From the IMG/VR virus record IMGVR_UViG_3300024239_000015, positions 1-64,000 of that record: a stretch of 64,000 nt of DNA; one strand, given 5' to 3'. Below, piece after piece: positions 2,427 through 20,157 of the stretch (position 1 is its first letter; each line of letters starts with the position of its first letter). The notes under the pieces were generated by a model that was not told the DNA's origin, searched no databases, and saw only the letters and a list, made by a program, of their open reading frames with translations. A program made the translations under genes and the position numbers.

Positions 2427-4406
2427 TTACACAGTCGGGTTGATGATTGGATCAAACGGATGCGGAGTGCGTAATCGTCTCAAGAACGCTGCAGGGTCTG
2501 AGAACACTGCATGCTGCTCTTGGTACGCTGCTTGTGCAGCCAAACTACGCCCACCAATGATTTCGCTGTACCGACCGAATTGTGCTTCCCCTCCTGGTAA
2601 AGGTAAACGGAAGTCTCCTCGGCTTTTCGAACGAATCATCGTTGCTTTGAGAATCACCTCTAACAACGCAATGTTGATCACAAACTTACCGCTGACCAAG
2701 TCATAGAAATCAGCCAACGCAATTGCAAGGCTGTTGTGGTCTGAAAGATCCAAGTGTTCTTTTGCTTGGTTGTCTCCATTGCCTTTGATCAATGACTTGA
2801 CGTCTGCCATAAACTCAATCATACTGGATTGTTTCTTCGGTAGTACAAACAACGGTTGGTTGTGTGTCCAGCCTGCTAAACTCACCTTGATGTACTTCGC
2901 ATCGGTTTCGTACCCTACGCGAGCAATGTGCTCTAAGAACTCTTTGCTGAAACTAGAGAGACGAGACCCCATACAGACTGACACAGGTGTGGTTTCTCCA
3001 AACCCGTCGTCGTCTTCTGTAATAAACTGCACAGAAGAGAGTTGGGAGATTCGAGAGATACTCAAGTCGGAGATATCACACAACGCGATGTCATTTAAGT
3101 TAGGGACTTCTTCTCGTAGCACAGCAATCGTTGTGCGTTTGGGTTTGATCTTCGAGGAAATCGCTATACTGACCCGATCAGGTAACACAGCGATGTAGGG
3201 TTCGTCGTAGGTAGGTACGATAAACTCATCCACGAGCGCACTACCGTTTAAGTGTTTAGTAGACAGTACGTTTTGGGACACTGCAGAGCAGAGCTCAATA
3301 ACCGCCATATGACCTAAACTGGTTTCTTCATCGATACTCAGACCAATGTCCCCTAAGCACGCTAGACACACTCCTTTAGGGGAGATGTGTTTACATTGCA
3401 TAGGAGAGCGTAGAAAGATCGTGGTATTGACTAAGTGCGTTTCGTTCCCTAAGATTCGTTTGATACTACCGTCTGCAAGTACGTGGTTTTTACCTGCAAG
3501 AGAAGGGAGGTGTTTCTCTTTGACTGTCCAAGGAACGTAGTCTGTGGAACCACAGTCGTAATTCACAACGTGGTCGATGATGTTCCCAACCAGCTGTAGT
3601 TCACGGTTGAAATACTCAACATCCGCCAGTGGATCTTTCTGTAAGAACAGAGCAAGTGATGCAGCTCTGGATTCCATCATCGAATCCGCCAGAGTCACTA
3701 AGCCGTGTGCAAACCCATACACGATCGGTTTGTTAAACACGTTGTAACTGATGTCTTGTAGAATCCCCCGTGGACCAAACACCTGCTGGATTTGTCCAAT
3801 CTTTAAAAGAGCAGACTTGATCCCTTCCGCTACACGGTTTCCTCGTAACTCCGTGGGAGAGTTCAGAGTTTTCCCTACCACCTTATACACGTCACGGATA
3901 TGCATGTCCGCTTGTTCGCACAGCTCAGGGTCGTCCCAGTTCATGGATTGAATGCGTTCGTTTGCGGCGTAGATGTCTGGATGCTCTAACACTTCCAGAT
4001 AATCCAACGCACTGACAGACGTTACGTACGCACCCAACAACCCATTGCAGTCGTTCACTAACGTGTTGACTTGTTCGTACGCTTCTTTGCGTAAGTCCAA
4101 TACATGCACACGCCCTTGCGTGTAGTCGTGGATATCAAACATCACTCGCTCAAACAACCGTGGTGTGGTTTGAGCAGTGAGTCGTTCATTCCCAATGTGG
4201 TGACGTTTACAGATGGGTACCTCAGGCGCTCGTTTGAAGAAACTCCAGTGGTACCACGAGTAGATCGTCTCACGGATTGTCGTGGTTAACAACCCATCGT
4301 CAAAGTGGACGACACAGGGTAAGTTCTCCCCATCAATCGCTTGTGGAAGTGCCCAGATCTGCCAGCGTGTGTACTGCAGTAAATCCCGTACGTTGTACTC
4401 TAGCAT
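2427..4406 (-). CDS. Non-virion RNA polymerase beta'-like subunit, C-terminal part (phiKZ gp74-like)
   Basis: KIGQIQQVFGPRG, SRAAS..L, Zn-site RSPMQC..VC..C and SQNVLSTKH (trigger-loop region); synteny. Confidence 0.88.
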   Translation of the reverse strand: MLEYNVRDLLQYTRWQIWALPQAIDGENLPCVVHFDDGLLTTTIRETIYSWYHWSFFKRAPEVPICKRHHIGNERLTAQTTPRLFERVMFDIHDYTQGRVHVLDLRKEAYEQVNTLVNDCNGLLGAYVTSVSALDYLEVLEHPDIYAANERIQSMNWDDPELCEQADMHIRDVYKVVGKTLNSPTELRGNRVAEGIKSALLKIGQIQQVFGPRGILQDISYNVFNKPIVYGFAHGLVTLADSMMESRAASLALFLQKDPLADVEYFNRELQLVGNIIDHVVNYDCGSTDYVPWTVKEKHLPSLAGKNHVLADGSIKRILGNETHLVNTTIFLRSPMQCKHISPKGVCLACLGDIGLSIDEETSLGHMAVIELCSAVSQNVLSTKHLNGSALVDEFIVPTYDEPYIAVLPDRVSIAISSKIKPKRTTIAVLREEVPNLNDIALCDISDLSISRISQLSSVQFITEDDDGFGETTPVSVCMGSRLSSFSKEFLEHIARVGYETDAKYIKVSLAGWTHNQPLFVLPKKQSSMIEFMADVKSLIKGNGDNQAKEHLDLSDHNSLAIALADFYDLVSGKFVINIALLEVILKATMIRSKSRGDFRLPLPGGEAQFGRYSEIIGGRSLAAQAAYQEQHAVFSDPAAFLRRLRTPHPFDPIINPTV

Positions 4407-7000
4407 TTCTGTTTCCTCGCTTCTTGACGTTTACGCGTCGTAAAACGACGACCACTACATTCCATCACGTGATTCACAAACAAGTAACTCCGACCGTTCC
4501 CACGTTTGACTACGTGTTTGTCCCACACGGCTTGGATGTCCATCGGGTTGTCAGCCGTCAGTAGTTTATACGCAATCGCTTTTTGTGCTGCAGGAGAGTT
4601 TTGCATCTCCAAGAAGTCCGCTGTGGCTTGAGGTCCAATCTTTGCAACCAGCAAACGGATTTCTGCTTCACCCAGTATCCGTGTCGGGTTTTCACGCCAC
4701 GGTTTACTGTTACGATCGTTCTGCGTGAGTTTCGCTAAGATCCCATAGTGCTGACGTTTGAAGCTGCTGCCCGCTGCAGCGTCATCGCCAATCTTCTCTA
4801 ACAACATCACGTACATACTACCAATCAACACAGGGTCTTTCGTCGTGTACTCTTTCCCAGCGTAATCCTTATACGTCACAGGACCGATAGGAATAGGAAA
4901 CGACTCTCTGAGCTGTTGGATTTGTGGAGCACCAATGTTAGGACTGTGGGGTGGGAGCAACAACCTCACCACAGGCTGGCTGACCGCAAACTCCGGATGG
5001 CGATGTTGGTGAATCTGCTCATTTAACTCTTTGAGCTTTTCAGCTGGACTGAGTTTGAAGCTTAAGTACTCCTCATATTGCAACGGAGAAGCAACCGAGT
5101 AATACGCCATCAAATACCGCCACGCATCGTCCACACGTCCTCGATCCATAAACTTGATCAAGTTCTGTCGCACCCACCAACTGGTTGCGTTGACGTAATG
5201 TTCGTAAATAATACCCGGATTCATTCGTTTGGTGACCGAGTCGCCACAGAAAACCAGATGTGCTCTACGTCCCCATTGGTCTATAGGCATATCTTCCCAT
5301 TTTCTGATATCTACCAATACCCCTTTCTTTTTGTCCAGTTATGTCGCTACCATAACCCGGTGTGCTAAGACACCCGCCCTTACTTTCATAAGGGAACAGA
5401 CTATATCAATCCCACAGCGGTACGGTTTATGTACCCTGGTTGGGCCTCTCGTTTGGGGCGGCCAATCGCTTGCCGCTCTACAGGGTGGTCCAGTCCCTTA
5501 GTCGTTGAACACATCCCATACCTGTAAATAGGGTTAGGGACTTCGATGCGGATTGCCCCGACGTTACTACAGTAACGCTCTATGTCTCTTTTACCATACC
5601 TGAGTAGTTAGTTCAGCCACCGTGGAGTGATGTAAACATCACTCGATCACTGTTTCCAGCACGGCTTGGTGTACATAGTTTCTAGGGTGTTCCCGTCAGT
5701 TAGATGAGTGGCATCTAAGAATTACTTCCTAGACGAACAAAGCCTTACCGCTCATTGAGCCATAAGTTCCGTTACCAAGTAAGCCTACAGCTTTTGAACC
5801 TACATTCGGTGTGTACTTGTAGGTGTATTTGATCTTTACCCACCAATCATCCAGAGGTGCAGCACGATACGTTCTCGTTACGATCGCTTTGGCATTCTTT
5901 GGATTATTCGGTAGGGCTTCTAGTGCAAGGAAACGTTCCAGTTCAGGTGTGGTTTGCACCCGTTCCGGTTGGTACTTTCCATTTCCTATACGCCGTACGT
6001 AATCTCGATACGTTTGGATGACCTCACTGTAAAACTCATCCTGCGCAGTTTGATACCGCTGTGGTTGAGTTTCCATCCCCACTGGCGTCGGTGGGGTTTG
6101 GTTTGTAAAGTCATGGAGTACTTCGATGTCAGTGACGATCGCACCACCTTTAGCGTACACGCGTTTATCGAACTTGTAGTCGATTTCCCGTAACGCTTTA
6201 AGCGACATTTGACATGGTCCTAAGAGTTCATCGTAAGGTCGCATGACAAACAGTAACCCATCGTCTCTTATTTTCTCCCCTACGTCTGGATACGGTTTGT
6301 AATTCTCATCGTCCCCATAAAGGTTTAACAAGAAGAACTTTTTACCATAACTACAGACAGCCTCTCCAAACGCCGTAGCGCGATTGGCTTTACACCACGT
6401 ATCGGAGGCAACGATACCGTCCTCGATGATCTCTGGGATCGTCATGAACGCAATATCGGTTTCTACCCCGTACATATACTCCCCATCGTCAGTGACGTTG
6501 GGAGAGTCTGCAAACACGTATCCTTTAGGGATAATGTCCCCTGGTTTAAATTTGTTAAAGCTGTTCTGTAACTGATCCGCTCTGTATTTAAACCCGAAGG
6601 TTTGGTGCGCACAGTGGTGTGTACGTAAAAGCACCATCCCTAAGGAATGGATTCCATTTTGTAGTTTCTCCATCTCCTCGTAGATCAGGATCGTCGTGGG
6701 GTTACTGCGAAATGGAAAGCCTCCTAGTTTCTTTGGAAACTTATGGATTACTTTTAACAACCGTCCGGTGGTAGGCATCGTTTGTTTAAAAGTAGTTTGT
6801 GCGTATTCAAACTCGTGTCCTGCGATCAAGTTAGGTCGCGTAGGACAATCCACCACTAAACTTTGTGCCTGATGACCTCCCCGCATGGATAAACGCGGGG
6901 AAGACGCACAGGCGATATAGTTTACTAAATCGGTGGTGTTCCCGAGCAATTGGGGATGCAGCTCGTTTTTAGACCTGTGTACCAAGGGTCTCAAAATCAT
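4400..7000 (-). CDS. Non-virion RNA polymerase beta-like subunit, C-terminal part (phiKZ gp71-73-like), two exons: about 7000-5771 and 5326-4400
   Basis: Exon 1 ends GSKAVGLLG(N); exon 2 starts KGVLVDIRKWEDMPID, rebuilding the beta motif GDK.AGRHGNKGV..I...EDMP; KRMNPG, GSMYVMLLEK and GEAEIR follow. Confidence 0.9.
5327..5773 (-). mobile_element. Group I intron without ORF in nvRNAP beta-C
   Basis: R element GTTCAACGAC (5501-5510), S element GATATAGTC (5399-5407), P3 GCCACTC/GAGAGGC, P2 with GTAA loop, P9 CCCTTAT-GAAA-GTAAGGG; 5' boundary uncertain (5770 or 5773). Confidence 0.88.
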
Positions 7001-15886: not shown

Positions 15887-15925
15887 AAAAAAAAAAGAAA
15901 GAGCCCGAAGGCTCTTTGCTTTTTT
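15887..15925 (-). terminator. Intrinsic terminator (A- and T-runs on both sides)
   Basis: aaaaaaaaaagaaagagc-ccgaag-gctctttgctttttt. Confidence 0.75.
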
Positions 15926-15931
15926 ATTCAT

Positions 15932-16540
15932 TTACCCCAATGCCCCATTGAGCTCATCGGTGGTGTCAATCCCTTCTGCAAATCCAGCTACCATAACATC
16001 GATACTGTACCGAATGTCTAGTTTCTGTTGCGTACTTAAAGGAATCTCGTCGTCGTCCCCTACGACACAAACCCGTACTAAAGGTCCTTCGTCGTCAAAG
16101 TTGACTTGTCCACTGTAAACACGACAGTAGTCATCGTGGTCCCAACGAGACACACCCGGCTGTAGGTCGACATACCGCTCTCCAAACCCATGACAGCGTT
16201 GGTCGTGGTACACGTCCCGGATCTCAGGAGCCACCATCAACCACCGTACCATTTCTTGTGGAGCGTTCTGTACCTCTTCATACGTTGACAACCGATGGAT
16301 ACTGTTGACTTGTGTGAAGCTTTCCGTCCGAGCACGTAACGCGTCTGCAATCACTAACGCGTGTGAGTCAACCAAAGTTGACGCGTGTGCAATCGCTTGG
16401 TCGTACTGAGCCCGTCCAAGCTCAGTTAACCCACTGACGTAATCGTGTCGTTGTGTCTCTACGTACTGGAGTACGTTTTGATGTGGACGTCCGTAAGCCG
16501 CAGCATGTTGCAGCGCACGGCCTCCTTCTACCACTCGCAT
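15932..16540 (-). CDS. Conserved nucleus-block protein directly downstream of beta'-N
   Basis: ATG abuts the TAA of the reconstructed beta'-N exon 3 (GGAGG RBS inside that exon). Confidence 0.7.
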   Translation of the reverse strand: MRVVEGGRALQHAAAYGRPHQNVLQYVETQRHDYVSGLTELGRAQYDQAIAHASTLVDSHALVIADALRARTESFTQVNSIHRLSTYEEVQNAPQEMVRWLMVAPEIRDVYHDQRCHGFGERYVDLQPGVSRWDHDDYCRVYSGQVNFDDEGPLVRVCVVGDDDEIPLSTQQKLDIRYSIDVMVAGFAEGIDTTDELNGALG

Positions 16541-16804
16541 TTATACCTCCAGGTTTTTAAATTGCGCCAGTTGGTGGTCTGGGTCATACCGTTCTATAGG
16601 CAACTCAAACCGTTTTGCTGACGCTTCATCTCGATACAGCCAGTTAGCTATCGTAGCAATAGTTGCACTGTGTAGTGCAATTACACGACTGACTTTACGA
16701 GGCGTACCGTGGTCTAATACCCCTTTGTGAGGCGCTAGTTTCCTAAGCGCTTCAAATTGCTCCCTGTCTAATGCGACAAGGGCATTTAATGCATCACCGT
16801 CAAA
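16541..16804 (-). CDS. beta'-N exon 3 (87 aa, not in the ORF track)
   Basis: TTT GAC GGT GAT GCA = FDGDA... open to TAA at 16541; preceded by the intron terminal G at 16805. Confidence 0.9.
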   Translation of the reverse strand, partial: FDGDALNALVALDREQFEALRKLAPHKGVLDHGTPRKVSRVIALHSATIATIANWLYRDEASAKRFELPIERYDPDHQLAQFKNLEV

Positions 16805-19800
16805 CCATGTATGTTCGGAGAGTTCGCAAGGCTCTCCCGCGTCTCACGCTTCACAGCGTGGGTACGCAGCTGTAGGCTTTCCCTACAGTGCAGACTATAC
16901 CATCTACTCTCCTTTATAGAAGAGCAGCACCACATTTCGAAGTACCTTGAGTTTTCACTCTAGCTTGTACCCCTACTCCCCGCTACGGGACAGTCGTTGA
17001 ACACACTCCGTAATCTGTGTAAACAAACCCTTAGGAGCTTCGCTGCTGATTGACCATTTTACCTTTCGGTTTCTTTTTCATCCCCTTAGCGCCGTTTCCG
17101 GTTTCTTTTCAGCATAGGGCATCTCTACGATTGTTTCTGGGTTTCCCCACCTGACGTTCAGAAGACTCGCGCCGTCCTAGTGATCTCCGTGTACCGCACT
17201 TGCTGCCAAGTACTGTAGTTTACTGTTTCCAGCACGGTGTTGGTTGCAGAGCTTTAGGCTTTTCCAGCGTTTAGTGGTGTACGCATCCACCCTCGCGGAT
17301 AGATGGGACTTTAACATACTAACTAACGTTAACGTATTCGATTTGATATATTGACCATCTACCCCCGTTGATGGACATTCCCCTTTGTACCGTATTTCTT
17401 CGAGCTCCCACTTCCGCACAAAAGTCCAGAGTCGACGCGTAGTGCTTAACTTCGCCGGTCAACTTATTGGTTACTTTTATCGGAAAGGCCGGACGTCGCG
17501 AGTTAGGTGACATTTTCTTAGGCTTTCTCTTAACGACAGTTCCCACAGAACCTTCCTTCTCGTCAAGATGTTTTGCTAGGAATAAACCCCTGACTCTAGT
17601 CCCCCTATTTATCGACTGCCATATCGAACTCGTAGACACATTGAAGTATCTGGCAGCTTCCCCGTAGCTCTCGAAGATATAAACTTCTTTTCCATCCTTA
17701 GAAGTCAATACAACTTCGCGCGGGGCACCATTTGGTTTCTCGCCGACATTACTGGAATCGATTTGTTTCCAACTCGAGTCCGCGTAACGCACGTTGTATT
17801 TTTTCAAGAACGGAGTTTGCTGTGTGGAGTTCAGATAAACGTGTAACCTACTCTGGGACGCTTTCAGCCACGCGGCTGCTTTGTTTAAACCCAAGAACGA
17901 ATTAACTTCCTGCGTGGTTAAGTCTAAGACCTCTACAGGACGATTATCTTTCTTCAGCCCTAACTCGTAAGCGTGCCATAAGTTTCTTTTCCTATCGACC
18001 CATTCTAGGTTACTGGCTCTGTTGTTAAATTTATCGCCATCGATGTGATTCGTGACGTAGTGGTCGTGTTCTTTGTGATGGAACGTTTCGGCGACAAGAC
18101 GATGGTGTGTCATCGTGCCTTTACCGCGTATGTTCATCACGTTATACCCGAAATGTGAGTTGAAGTACGCTAAGGGACAATAATCTAACAAAACATCAAT
18201 TACTATCCCTTCTTCGGAAATCACAATCCGAGGAATCTGGGGGTGGTGGTAATACTTAGGGTATCTTTTCGATTCTATCAAACCTTCGCGCATCTTTCAT
18301 TTCCTTCTCATGCTAGTCGCATAAGATAGATGCATGTTAAGTTAATTAATGTTATTTCATCGCAGTTCATGCCGGTTATACAGTGAGTGGATACACTGAC
18401 TGAGTTTATAGCCGGGTCTTTCTTTATCCTGCTGATAAAGAATTGCTGCATGGATAGTTCATGCAGTGTGGGCTTTGCTTTCACGTAGGGCGCGACACCT
18501 ACGCAGTTCTTAAAAGAACGTCCCCAGAATTACCTGGGATAAAAGACTATATCTTCATCCGTTATAAGTAGGGATAACGGAGCTCCTCGTTTCGCATAGT
18601 TTTAAACTACTTAGCGCTAGGCTAACCACCTGACCTTTCGATCGCTTGCGGGCTACTCTACTCCCTTCTCTTTCTTATTGCAAGAAAGCGGTTTCGATAG
18701 TCGTTGAACACATTCCGTAATGTATACTGCTGATACACCCTTAGGAACTTCGCTGCTGATAGACCCAGACTCTTTGTTTTCAAACCGTCACGTAGACCGT
18801 TTCCAGTTGCGTTGTGGTAAAGAGTTTTAGATAGATCGTCCCAGCAGTTAGAGGAGTTTGGCGTTACTGTTACCAGTAAAGGAAACCTAAGTCAATTTCG
18901 ATGGAAAATACACGGGATACCACGGATCTCTCGATGTTCGTGGGGTTGTGTACCGATGGGGTTATAAACACCAACGACGTAAGGGGAGTCGCTGATTAAC
19001 TCATCAAAGAGTGCATCCAGCTCTGGGTTGTAAGTGTGAGCGTTTTCAGACAGGAATTTCTCAATCTGATTCGGACCCCACCCACGTTTCAAAAGCTTAT
19101 TGGTGAGCTGTGCTTGCAATACAGCAATCGCAGTCGTCCACGGAATCTCCAGCTCTGAGTATAAGTGCCATCCTGTCAAGGAGTTCACGACGTTACGGAA
19201 GCTGTAGTTTGCACGTGTACCGAAGATGTGTTTACGGAACCATCCCTTCTTCCCACCTAGAATGTTCTTGTACAGGTTGTTGTAGTACGCACTGAGTTGT
19301 ACCACACACACCGTTGCACGACTCTCTGCTTTCTTTAACCGTACGTTCTGGTACGCTTCCCCTAAGTCGAGAATGGTGTAGGCTGCATCAATCGCGTCTA
19401 CCATTCCGAAGTCGGCGTAGGTACCCACCGCTGTTTTCTCTGTAATAAACGCAATCTTGTTTGGGATTGGTAGATATGGAGTAAACACCAAGTCACGGTT
19501 CTCACGCACCAGCTCCATGACGTTGTCTTTGCGATCGGGTGAGCCTGAGTACAATCGGTTATCCACGAGGATACTTAAGTACAGGTCAAAGTGATCAAAG
19601 AAGTTATTCAACCCCCGTTGAAACCCATACGCTTCCAGTTGTTCTCCAAACGCACTATGACCACTCGGGATACGGTAGTAGGGGTCACATAACCACCGCA
19701 TGATACTGATCCCGTTCTTCTTAAACAGTTGGTCTAAGATGTACCAGATTGTTGGGTTAATCAACGCTTTCACGCCCCGTGGTGCGCGTATCCATAACGT

Positions 19801-20097
19801 AGACTCGATTGGACGCTCGAGAATACTCATGGGAACGGTACCACACAGCTCACAGCGCAGTTTAATGCTTGCTGCATACTGCCCTGTGGTATGCCCACAC
19901 CCACACGACGGGAGGACGCTGACTTGGTCTCCATCGTACTCTGTCCGTATTAAATTGGACAGAAATTGTTTTGCTTGCACGGTACGTGCGTCGATGTCAT
20001 TGATACACACCGGTGGCACGGACTGTGCGCCGTACATTTCCACGTAATCGACGAGTTCTAGATAGACGCCATCGTCGTTTTCGTTTGTTTCTACCAC
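16541..20097 (-). CDS. Non-virion RNA polymerase beta'-like subunit, N-terminal part (phiKZ gp55-like), three exons: 20097-18895, 18472-18359, 16804-16541; 526 aa when spliced
   Basis: Zn finger C.CG..C..C; KKGWFRKHIFGTR; spliced junctions read IFHRN|PTLH and GMNCD|FDGDALN, restoring the NADFDGD-type active-site motif. Confidence 0.92.
16805..18358 (-). mobile_element. Group I intron 2 of beta'-N, carrying an HNH endonuclease in the P1 loop
   Basis: 5' site GAT| (U) pairs with IGS GTCCCA; P4 GCTG/CAGC; P3 CACCAC/GTGGTG; R GTTCAACGAC (16993-17002); S GTATAGTC (16893-16900); ends in G. Confidence 0.9.
17319..18293 (-). CDS. Intron-encoded HNH homing endonuclease with NUMOD1-type DNA-binding repeats (I-HmuI-like)
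   Basis: HRLVAETF..VTNHIDGDKFNNRASNLEWV; C-terminal repeats such as FESYGEAARYFNVSTSSI; AAGGA RBS. Confidence 0.92.
   Translation of the reverse strand: MREGLIESKRYPKYYHHPQIPRIVISEEGIVIDVLLDYCPLAYFNSHFGYNVMNIRGKGTMTHHRLVAETFHHKEHDHYVTNHIDGDKFNNRASNLEWVDRKRNLWHAYELGLKKDNRPVEVLDLTTQEVNSFLGLNKAAAWLKASQSRLHVYLNSTQQTPFLKKYNVRYADSSWKQIDSSNVGEKPNGAPREVVLTSKDGKEVYIFESYGEAARYFNVSTSSIWQSINRGTRVRGLFLAKHLDEKEGSVGTVVKRKPKKMSPNSRRPAFPIKVTNKLTGEVKHYASTLDFCAEVGARRNTVQRGMSINGGRWSIYQIEYVNVS
18359..18472 (-). CDS. beta'-N exon 2 (114 nt, 38 aa, not in the ORF track)
   Basis: Translates PTLHELSMQQFFISRIKKDPAINSVSVSTHCITGMNCD, matching the beta' segment (R.)PTLH...N.D. Confidence 0.9.
18473..18894 (-). mobile_element. 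Group I intron 1 of beta'-N (422 nt, no ORF)
   Basis: 5' site GAAAT| pairs with GTTTC including the U-G wobble; R GTTCAACGAC (18700-18709); S AAGATATAGTC (18545-18555); ends AAAG before CCC ACA CTG. Confidence 0.9.
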
Positions 20098-20157
20098 AGT
20101 GACTCCCTGAGTGAATTGAAACGAATTTTAAAGAAAAGAAAAGGAAAAGCGGCAAAG

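What the first reader, a model, noticed from the sequence alone, without database searches (positions are those of the whole stretch)
5327..5776. Group I intron in nvRNAP beta-C with a non-obvious 5' splice site
Seen in sequence: a full group I core (P2, P3, P4, R, S, P9 stems) separates GSKAVGLLG(N) from KGVLVDIR. A canonical U|...G splice (GGT| ... AAAAAG|) gives LLG-KGV, one residue shorter than the beta motif HGNKGV. Restoring GNKGV requires splicing after a C (AAC|). A well-paired P1 (AAAGCT/GGCTTT) also exists further upstream after K-A. Inference: either a non-canonical C-based 5' site or a shortened catalytic motif. The intron has no endonuclease.
Basis: partly seen in the sequence, partly recalled or inferred. 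Interest (0 to 1): 0.65.

Follow-up and report, generated by a model that had tools for sequence, protein, structure and literature searches.

The report
Phage RNA polymerase intron, C-G splice site
A 444-base self-splicing group I intron with no endonuclease gene interrupts the catalytic motif of a jumbo phage's own RNA polymerase gene, at a site where relatives such as phiKZ also carry introns, and it most likely splices after a C paired with G instead of the almost universal U-G wobble pair.

Summary
It lies on the minus strand. Rfam's group I model matches window 5767..5377 (53.8 bits, cut-off 50).

The host gene is the ortholog of phiKZ gp71-73, the non-virion RNA polymerase beta-C subunit. 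The gp74 ortholog follows it.

I place the intron at 5770..5327 (444 nt). Its largest sense ORF is 37 aa.

Homology fixes the junction. Every intron-less ortholog keeps G-x-KG[V/I]. The closest one (64% identity) reads GLLGN|KGV, and the two exons align to it without a gap. The 3' terminal G (5327) is invariant in eight introns at this site.

The guide sequence sits just 5' of P2 in all these introns. It covaries with the last exon codon: GGU/GCC, GCU/GGC, GAU/GUC, AAU/GUU. Here the guide CUUUGUU (5742..5736) is the exact complement of the joined exons AAC|AAAG. So the 5' splice site follows C5771, with a C-G pair.

All 12 other alleles with an intron at this site have U at that position. Five independent metagenome assemblies carry the same C, so it is not an error.

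The canonical GGU| alternative is unfavourable by folding energy and would delete a conserved residue. The upstream AAAGCU pairing is rejected.

Splicing was not observed, because no RNA data could be reached. This is a new member of a known intron family with a rare splice-site pair that has precedent.

The parts
5771..7000 (-). Exon 1 of the nvRNAP beta-C gene (phiKZ gp71-73 ortholog): 410 codons, ending ..GSKAVGLLGN (AAC = 5773-5771).
   Evidence: PHROG 3295 profile positions 5-403. PDB 7OGP chain C, E = 3e-60. Aligns to residues 1-409 of the intron-less homolog P0004 at 64% identity.
5327..5770 (-). Group I intron, 444 nt, without an ORF. The first base is G5770 and the last is the terminal guanosine G5327.
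   Evidence: RF00028 hit at 5767..5377, 53.8 bits. Boundaries come from protein contiguity and from the alignment of eight same-site introns (A1). No sense ORF longer than 37 aa.
4400..5326 (-). Exon 2 of nvRNAP beta-C: 308 codons starting KGVLVDIRKWEDMPID, plus the stop codon at 4402-4400.
   Evidence: PHROG 3295 profile positions 404-696. PDB 7OGP chain C residues 394-692. P0004 residues 410-704 at 62% identity.
5736..5742 (-). Internal guide sequence CUUUGUU. GUU (5738-5736) pairs with exon 1 AAC (P1), with G5738 opposite C5771. CUUU (5742-5739) pairs first with intron G5770, G5769, A5768 and later with exon 2 AAAG at 5326-5323 (P10).
   Evidence: The minimum-free-energy fold of 5782..5733 contains exactly these P1 pairs. 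RNAduplex finds the same register as in phiKZ, PhiPA3, L009, L053 and L060. The exact complementarity to AAC|AAAG is read directly from the sequence.
5744..5766 (-). Extension hairpin of P1 (CUUAU-GCUC AAU GAGC-GUAAG). It occupies the place where relatives carry the endonuclease ORF.
   Evidence: RNAfold, -11.2 kcal/mol on its own. The ORFs of phiKZ, phiKp_32, L009, L053 and L056 lie between the 5' splice site and the guide.
5712..5735 (-). P2 hairpin, 10 bp with a GUAA loop. The stop codon of the exon-1 read-through (TAG 5731-5729) lies in its 5' strand.
   Evidence: RNAfold. The P2 pairs are supported by compensatory changes among eight introns (columns 8-33).
5377..5711 (-). Catalytic core, with approximate coordinates. 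P3 is 5707-5702 with 5451-5446. P4 to P6 span about 5698-5510, with about 130 nt of insertion in P5. P7 is 5503-5499 with 5403-5399. Two hairpins at 5498-5452 are read as P7.1 and P7.2. P8 is about 5445-5411. P9 is 5394-5377.
   Evidence: Rfam alignment. RNAalifold on eight same-site introns gave 55 pairs, 38 with compensatory changes. The helix coordinates were read by me from those alignments.
5327..5376 (-). 3' tail: P9.1 (about 5374-5359), P9.2 (about 5354-5339), then CUGGACAAAAAG ending in the terminal G5327.
   Evidence: 86.7% identical to the PhiPA3 intron tail over 90 nt. G5327 is an invariant column in alignment A1 of eight introns.

Best explanation
What it is. The feature is a self-splicing group I intron of the phage IA type, without an endonuclease gene. 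It sits between the Asn codon AAC (5773-5771) and the Lys codon AAA (5326-5324) of the catalytic G-x-K-G-V strand (bacterial beta HGNKGV). The host gene is the non-virion RNA polymerase beta-C gene of a 233-kb jumbo phage.

Inferred mechanism.
1. Exon 1 AAC and the first intron bases GGA pair with the guide UUUGUU (5741-5736), just 5' of P2, to form P1.
2. An external guanosine attacks after C5771. This base forms a C-G Watson-Crick pair with G5738 where nearly all group I introns have a U-G wobble.
3. Exon 2 AAAG then pairs with CUUU (5742-5739) to form P10.
4. The terminal G5327 enters the G site in P7.
5. The exons are joined as ..GGU AAC|AAA GGG.., giving a 718-residue subunit reading ..GLLGNKGVLV..

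Status of each step. The intron, the gene identity, the 3' end and the guide position are shown by computation. The use of C5771 and splicing itself are inferred.
For: (1) Group I identity.
- RF00028 scores 53.8 bits against a cut-off of 50.
- Eight introns at the same site share a consensus fold of 55 pairs, 38 with compensatory changes.

(2) Junction from proteins.
- The PHROG 3295 profile runs 5-403 on exon 1 (to N410) and 404-696 from the K of exon 2.
- Xoo-sp14 is contiguous to the base.
- About 70 full-length homologs from metagenomes all keep G-x-KG[V/I].
- The closest homolog, P0004, aligns 1-409 (..GLLGN) to exon 1 and 410-704 (KGV..) to exon 2.
- In the phiKZ structure the first exon-2 residue is K394.

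(3) Guide position and covariation. The three guide bases lie 0-4 nt 5' of P2.
- phiKZ, PhiPA3 and L009 pair exon GGU with guide GCC.
- phiKp_32 pairs GCU with GGC.
- L055, L056 and L060 pair GAU with GUC.
- L053 pairs AAU with GUU.
- The window pairs AAC with GUU.
- L053 has the same register held by a continuous helix of 17 bp.

(4) Exact complement. CUUUGUU (5742-5736) is the perfect Watson-Crick complement of the ligated junction AAC|AAAG (sequence).

(5) Energies. The register with C5771-G5738 is the minimum-free-energy fold (-14.2 kcal/mol). The register with U5774-G5738 evaluates at -7.5, worse than the hairpin alone at -11.2.

(6) The 3' end. G5327 is invariant in alignment A1.

(7) The C is real. 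Contigs from five different samples (SRR7690230, ERZ4201046, SRR13298164, JGI 3300024308, SRR10854512) carry it. The two that span the whole gene beyond the reference match, L049 and L050, have an identical intron while exon 2 differs at six sites. L051 and L052 end inside the intron but cover the 5' splice site without change.
Against:
- A U-G wobble at the cleavage site is close to universal. All 12 other same-site intron alleles examined have U at -1, including 7 Asn/Asp codons where C would be synonymous. This shows selection for U that this allele violates.
- AAU would also encode Asn, so no coding constraint explains the C.
- In the Tetrahymena ribozyme a C-1/G22 pair raises P1 undocking about 80-fold (PMC1891724). 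Splicing may therefore be slow.
- The exon part of P1 is only 3 bp.
- P3 of this intron has two mismatches in the family register.
Confidence: 0.7

Rival explanations
1. Canonical splice one codon upstream. The 5' splice site follows U5774 (GGU|), using a U-G wobble with the same guide G5738. The mature protein would read ..LLG-KGV.. and lack the Asn.
For: It keeps both consensus features, U before the cut and G at the intron end. GGUAA can pair with UUGUU as G-U, G-U, U-G, A-U, A-U (sequence). Selection for U at -1 is evident in the relatives.
Against: - This register costs +3.7 kcal/mol relative to leaving the guide unpaired. The rival register gains -2.8.
- It is absent from suboptimal folds within 3 kcal/mol.
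- It would remove a residue from a spacing kept in about 70 orthologs and in cellular RNA polymerases.
- It breaks the homology of the insertion point seen in the other same-site introns.
- The guide UU matches the AA of the Asn codon, not GG.
Confidence: 0.13
2. The intron no longer splices, or splices too poorly to matter. The subunit would then be made as two polypeptides: the 423-aa exon-1 ORF ending at TAG 5731-5729, and a product starting inside exon 2. This would be a further split of an already split polymerase.
For: - C at -1, the loss of the ORF, the mismatches in P3 and the long P5 insertion could be read as decay.
- Gene callers predict a 296-aa ORF from the in-frame ATG at 5290.
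- A long-read study saw no spliced reads for the phiKZ gp72 intron under its conditions (PMC10914365).
Against: - The catalytic core scores above the Rfam cut-off. P7, the terminal G and the guide are intact.
- The guide is an exact complement of the exon junction, which decay would not maintain.
- Any internal start would lose KGV, including the conserved Lys.
- The intron showed no differences in any of the five assemblies, two of which span it whole, although exon 2 varies.
- phiKZ makes a fused gp71-73 protein of 74 kDa (PMC4666361; PDB 7OGP).
Confidence: 0.07
3. Another 5' site is used. One candidate is after U5789. The other is after U5762 (the U-G pair inside the 5766-5744 hairpin).
For: Both offer a U-G pair in a helix of 5-6 bp (sequence).
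Against: - U5789 would delete the six codons VGLLGN.
- U5762 would insert GTY into the conserved strand. Neither fits any ortholog.
- GGCUUU overlaps the guide segment that pairs with exon 2. The resemblance arises because both exons contain AAAG.
- Neither site matches the guide position relative to P2 in the family.
Confidence: 0.02

Closest known systems
Intron of phiKZ genes 71/72/73 (nvRNAP beta-C, 'gp71-73')
   Same: - Same gene and same insertion point: H-G-G|K-G-V, GGU|..G|AAG.
- Same core, RF00028 at 87.6 bits.
- Guide just 5' of P2.
- About 69% identity over the aligned core.

   Different: - phiKZ carries the gp72 ORF in the P1 loop, giving a 1218-nt intron.
- It has the canonical U-G pair (GGU with GCC).
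- The window's intron has no ORF (444 nt) and pairs AAC with GUU.
PhiPA3 gene 065 intron (same site, 450 nt)
   Same: - Closest core, 75% identity.
- The last 90 nt are 86.7% identical, including CUGGACAAAAAG|AAAGG.
- It also has no intact ORF.

   Different: - PhiPA3 splices after GGU (U-G).
- Its P1 loop still holds an AT-rich remnant with the GGAUGGAUGGA motif that precedes the guide in the ORF-bearing phiKZ and L009 introns.
Metagenomic intron L053 (ENA ERZ1673962; protein P0010)
   Same: - Same site.
- Same Asn codon family and same guide (..UU-GUU-C-P2).
- Same first intron bases, GG.
- 72% core identity.

   Different: L053 reads AAU| (a U-G wobble) and carries a 445-aa HNH-type ORF in the P1 loop. 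The window reads AAC| and has no ORF.
Two fungal mitochondrial group I introns with a C.G pair at the 5' splice site (Hur and Waring, Nucleic Acids Res 1995; 23:4466)
   Same: A natural C-G pair replaces the conserved U-G pair at the cleavage site. I saw only the title, in the reference list of PMC6468297. The paper itself is not held.
   Different: - Those introns are in organelles, not in a phage.
- Their title raises selection on the protein as the cause. Here AAU would encode the same Asn, so that explanation does not apply.
PhiPA3 gp210 intron in a phage RNA polymerase gene (Birkholz et al., Science 2024, PMC11620839)
   Same: A putative group I intron placed at catalytic residues of a jumbo-phage RNA polymerase subunit gene.
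   Different: It interrupts a different RNA polymerase gene at a different site (after two conserved aspartates). It encodes an active HNH endonuclease that interferes with a competing phage. No endonuclease is present here.

Membership tests
Group I intron (Rfam RF00028) | Match to the covariance model at or above the curated score | tested here: met
   53.8 bits against 50, E = 7e-11, full model 1-253.
Group I intron (Rfam RF00028) | Conserved helices P3 to P9 supported by covariation | tested here: met
   RNAalifold on eight same-site introns gave 55 pairs, 38 with compensatory changes. In the family register the window's P3 has two mismatches.
Group I intron (Rfam RF00028) | Terminal guanosine at the 3' splice site and an intact P7 (G-binding helix) | tested here: met
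   G5327 is an invariant column. The 3' strand of P7 (UAGUC) is invariant in alignment A1, and the 5' strand (GACUA) is identical in all eight rows of alignment A2.
Group I intron (Rfam RF00028) | U-G wobble pair at the 5' splice site | tested here: not met
   At the junction required by homology the pair is C5771-G5738. A U-G pair is available only one codon upstream, in an unfavourable register.
Group I intron (Rfam RF00028) | Guanosine-dependent self-splicing | not testable with these tools
   No RNA reads were obtainable.
Subgroup IA (phage type, as T4 td) | Extra helices P7.1 and P7.2 between P7 and the 3' strand of P3 | tested here: inconclusive
   A 47-nt insert at 5498-5452 holds two hairpins (GGG..CCC and GCGGC..GCCGC), and similar inserts occur at the same place in most of the aligned relatives. 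No subgroup-specific model was run.
Same-site introns of jumbo-phage nvRNAP beta-C (phiKZ gp72-intron family) | Insertion between codon x and the Lys codon of G-x-K-G-V | tested here: met
Same-site introns of jumbo-phage nvRNAP beta-C (phiKZ gp72-intron family) | Sequence homology of the ribozyme | tested here: met
   62-75% identity over the cores of seven relatives. The 3' tail is 86.7% identical to PhiPA3.
Mobile (homing) group I intron | Intron-encoded homing endonuclease | tested here: not met
   The longest sense ORF is 37 aa. Relatives carry ORFs of 316-478 aa in the P1 loop, several of them HNH/NUMOD-type.
nvRNAP beta-C subunit (phiKZ gp71-73) | Homology to the subunit in the solved nvRNAP and synteny with gp74 | tested here: met
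   7OGP chain C at E = 3e-60 and 1e-40. The downstream gene 4406..2427 hits 7OGP chain D at 2.8e-86.

The most novel reading that the evidence does not exclude
A wild, circulating phage keeps an essential polymerase gene dependent on a group I intron that cleaves at a C-G Watson-Crick pair, although a synonymous U was available and 12 of 12 sister introns keep U. Either this intron class tolerates loss of the wobble pair far better than the Tetrahymena model suggests, or reduced splicing is used to throttle production of the polymerase subunit. A second related intron (L061) may do the same, one codon upstream. That would point to splice-site sliding between tandem GGY codons.
Probability: 0.55. 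Interest if true: 0.45.

Novelty: new member of a known kind. Interest (0 to 1): 0.36.

Why it matters
For annotation, the two ORFs (7000..5729 and the frame ending at 4400) should be joined as one 718-residue beta-C subunit. The join is 7000..5771 with 5326..4400. This is what phiKZ-like genomes need at the same place.

For RNA biology, the allele is a natural test of how much a phage-type group I intron depends on the U-G wobble at its cleavage site. It has a C-G pair, it is identical in all five independent environmental assemblies examined, it sits in an essential gene, and no coding reason explains it. Close relatives, L053 with AAU and the closest intron-less allele L058 (protein P0004) also with AAU, provide ready controls.

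The survey also shows that the G-x|KGV codon boundary of this gene is a widely used intron site in uncultured jumbo phages.

Tried and rejected
- Close DNA relatives. Megablast of the gene against the phage collection found nothing.
- IMG/VR by protein. The scan gave only distant relatives at 31-35% identity. One of them (L009) carries a same-site intron.
- IMG/VR by pattern. A 17-nt pattern from the intron tail gave 29 hits, all chance matches except PhiPA3 itself.
- Pfam gave no hit for either exon product. PHROGs and the PDB sequences did.
- GCCA (5712-5709) as a guide for GGU| was considered and rejected. It lies between P2 and P3 and takes part in P2/P3 pairing. It has no counterpart in the relatives.
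- ACCAAG (5669-5664) and GUUACU (5576-5571), complementary to CUUGGU and GGUAAC, were rejected. They lie inside the P5 insertion, and the second is inside its own 7-bp hairpin.
- The first Rfam helix (AUGGCUCAA with UUUGUUCGU) is a poor fit with two non-standard pairs. I replaced it with the P1 described here.
- RNAalifold also paired the guide with GGG after P9.1 (columns 5-7 with 439-441). The alignment is out of register there, so I do not rely on it.
- Hur and Waring 1995 and Varani and McClain 2000 are not held.
All searches and alignments were done exon by exon, by reference. No fold or search of the joined product was made.
Full report
WHAT IS THERE

The feature lies on the minus strand. 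Rfam's group I intron model (RF00028) matches window 5767..5377 over its whole length. The score is 53.8 bits against a curated cut-off of 50, with E = 7e-11 for the 64-kb window. It is the only Rfam family found in the window at gathering threshold.

Upstream, an ORF (7000..5729, 423 aa) ends ..GSKAVGLLGN and then reads 13 more codons into the intron, to a TAG at 5731-5729. Downstream, the same strand reads AAA GGG GTA.. (KGVLVDIRKWEDMPID..) from 5326 to a stop at 4402-4400. Inside the intron the longest sense ORF is 37 aa.

THE HOST GENE

- Pfam is silent on both exon products.
- PHROG 3295 (RNA polymerase beta subunit, 698 profile positions) matches exon 1 on positions 5-403 and exon 2 on positions 404-696.
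- Both exons hit chain C (PHIKZ071, the gp71-73 subunit) of the solved phiKZ non-virion RNA polymerase, at E = 3e-60 and 1e-40.
- The next gene (4406..2427) hits chain D, gp74, at 2.8e-86.
- gp71-73 is the C-terminal half of the beta-like subunit (PMC4666361).
- The window is the first 64 kb of a 233,377-bp virus record with direct terminal repeats.

THIS IS A KNOWN INTRON SITE

In phiKZ the same gene is split by gene 72. The exon ends read ..CAT GGT GGT| and |AAG GGC.., and the deposited protein has K394 as its first exon-2 residue. PhiPA3 gene 065 has a 450-nt intron at the same point. Its last 90 nt are 86.7% identical to the window's.

Same-site introns also occur in the following records.
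- phiKp_32, with a 457-aa ORF.
- The IMG/VR contig L009.
- Many metagenomic contigs found through the exon-1 ORF.

Of 133 homologs of the exon-1 ORF, about 70 are full-length intron-less proteins. About 45 stop at or near this motif, so they are interrupted alleles.

An RNAalifold consensus of eight same-site introns has 55 pairs, 38 of them with compensatory changes. It covers P2, P3, P4, P5, P6, P8, P9 and P9.1.

WHERE THE EXONS JOIN

On the 3' side, in an alignment from P7 to exon 2 the terminal G (window 5327) is an invariant column. In seven of the eight introns it is followed by a Lys codon (A1).

On the protein side there are four lines of evidence.
- Every full-length homolog keeps G-x-KG[V/I], with x = G, N, D, T or A.
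- Xoo-sp14 is contiguous to the base between the two exon alignments.
- The closest homolog (P0004, 64% and 62% identity) aligns residues 1-409 (..GLLGN) to exon 1 and 410-704 (KGV..) to exon 2.
- The PHROG profile positions 403 and 404 fall on N and K.

So the mature protein should read ..GLLGN|KGV... The 5' splice site then falls after C5771.

THE GUIDE SEQUENCE AGREES

In all same-site introns, the three bases that pair with the last exon codon lie 0-4 nt 5' of P2, and they covary with that codon.

| Intron(s) | Last exon codon | Guide bases |
|---|---|---|
| phiKZ, PhiPA3, L009 | GGU | GCC |
| phiKp_32 | GCU | GGC |
| L055, L056, L060 | GAU | GUC |
| L053 | AAU | GUU |
| window | AAC | GUU (5738-5736) |

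In L053 this register is held by a continuous 17-bp helix.

In the window, the minimum-free-energy fold of 5782..5733 contains these pairs: A5773-U5736, A5772-U5737, C5771-G5738, G5770-U5739, G5769-U5740 and A5768-U5741. A hairpin at 5766-5744 stacks on top, for a total of -14.2 kcal/mol. The register that would put U5774 opposite G5738 evaluates at -7.5. That is worse than the hairpin alone at -11.2.

The seven guide bases CUUUGUU (5742-5736) are the exact Watson-Crick complement of the ligated junction AAC|AAAG. This is the arrangement P1 plus P10 require.

It exists only because exon 1 also contains AAAG. It would also delete six conserved codons.

HOW UNUSUAL IS THE C

All 12 other same-site intron alleles whose DNA I could read have U before the cut: GGU four times, GCU once, AAU twice and GAU five times. 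That includes seven two-fold-degenerate codons where C would be synonymous. Intron-less alleles read GGC, GGC, GGT, GAC and AAT at that codon. U is therefore selected when the intron is present, as the U-G rule predicts, and the window is the exception.

It is not an assembly error. Contigs from five different samples carry the same exon-1 ORF. Two of them (L049, L050) span the whole gene and have an identical intron while differing from the window at six exon-2 sites. L048 is identical throughout. L051 and L052 end inside the intron, at about 5648 and 5525, but cover the 5' splice site without change.

AAU would also encode Asn, so no coding constraint explains the C. A natural precedent exists in two fungal mitochondrial introns (Hur and Waring 1995, seen only as a title). 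In the Tetrahymena ribozyme a C-1/G22 pair raises P1 undocking about 80-fold (PMC1891724). The expected consequence is slower, not abolished, splicing.

WHAT IS SHOWN AND WHAT IS INFERRED

Shown by computation:
- the group I fold;
- the gene identity;
- the shared insertion site;
- the invariant terminal G;
- the position and covariation of the guide;
- the reality of C5771.

Inferred:
- that the intron splices;
- that it does so after C5771.

I put this at about 0.7. The rest is divided among the canonical GGU| site that deletes Asn (0.13), no effective splicing with a further split subunit (0.07), other sites (0.02), and unknowns.

No RNA data could be reached. All comparisons were made exon by exon, by reference.

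VERDICT

The finding is real and well described. The intron is a new member, lacking an ORF, of the known intron family that occupies the G-x|KGV site of jumbo-phage nvRNAP beta-C genes. Its likely C-G splice-site pair is a rare feature with precedent. It deserves a simple splicing test but does not make a new kind of element.

Noticed in passing
whole genome G000; window 16870-17221(-), 18523-18903(-); outside the window 86051-86357(-), 174242-174571(+), 204017-204368(+): The 233-kb phage carries six matches to the group I model. One is above the cut-off, two score 47.2 bits and three score 23-29 bits. That is an unusually intron-rich genome.
   Followed up: partly
window 15900-20100 (-): A beta'-like polymerase gene appears to hold two introns.
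- Exon 1 (20097..about 18904) ends ..IRGIPCIF.
- A short middle piece reads ..KPTLHELSMQQFF..GMNCD.
- A 324-aa HNH-type ORF (18293..17319) sits beside the second ribozyme core.
- The last exon begins near ..FDGDALN, the equivalent of the catalytic NADFDGD motif.

   Followed up: partly
L061:1926-2320 (Logan SRR25158494): A related intron without an ORF has GGU AAA GGU after the invariant terminal G, and CAC GGC|GAU at the 5' side, with guide AUU-G-CC. A normal-length HGGKGV product needs a cut after GGC. That would be a second C-G splice pair, shifted one codon upstream. The alternative, HGD+GKGV, adds a residue.
   Followed up: partly
proteins P0006-P0008, P0030, P0042, P0074: Several exon-1-only homologs end ..HG[G/D]KGV plus a few residues. 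This suggests a second intron insertion site three codons downstream, after KGV, in other uncultured jumbo phages.
   Followed up: no
window 5712-5702 and 5451-5444 (-): In the family register, P3 of this intron has an A-A and a C-C mismatch. A shifted pairing of GCCACUC with GAGAGGC (6 bp plus an A-A mismatch) is possible and would absorb the GCC that looks like a guide for GGU| (sequence).
   Followed up: partly
L018:2392-2415, L001:3760-3790, L009:2640-2665: A GGAUGGAUGGA motif precedes the guide in phiKZ, PhiPA3 and L009. In L009 it falls within the last codons of the intron ORF (..LDGW..). PhiPA3's intron has no intact ORF but keeps the motif, so it looks like a recent ORF loss.
   Followed up: no
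window 4721-4769 (-), exon 2: Two other assemblies of the same phage (ERZ4201046, SRR13298164) share six substitutions within 49 nt of exon 2 and none elsewhere in the 2.6-kb gene. This looks like a small recombination patch.
   Followed up: no
literature: PMC10914365 against PMC4666361 and PDB 7OGP: A long-read transcriptome study reported no evidence of splicing for the phiKZ gp56, gp72 and gp179 introns. Yet the purified polymerase contains a fused 74-kDa gp71-73. Direct RNA evidence for splicing at this site seems to be missing even for phiKZ.
   Followed up: no
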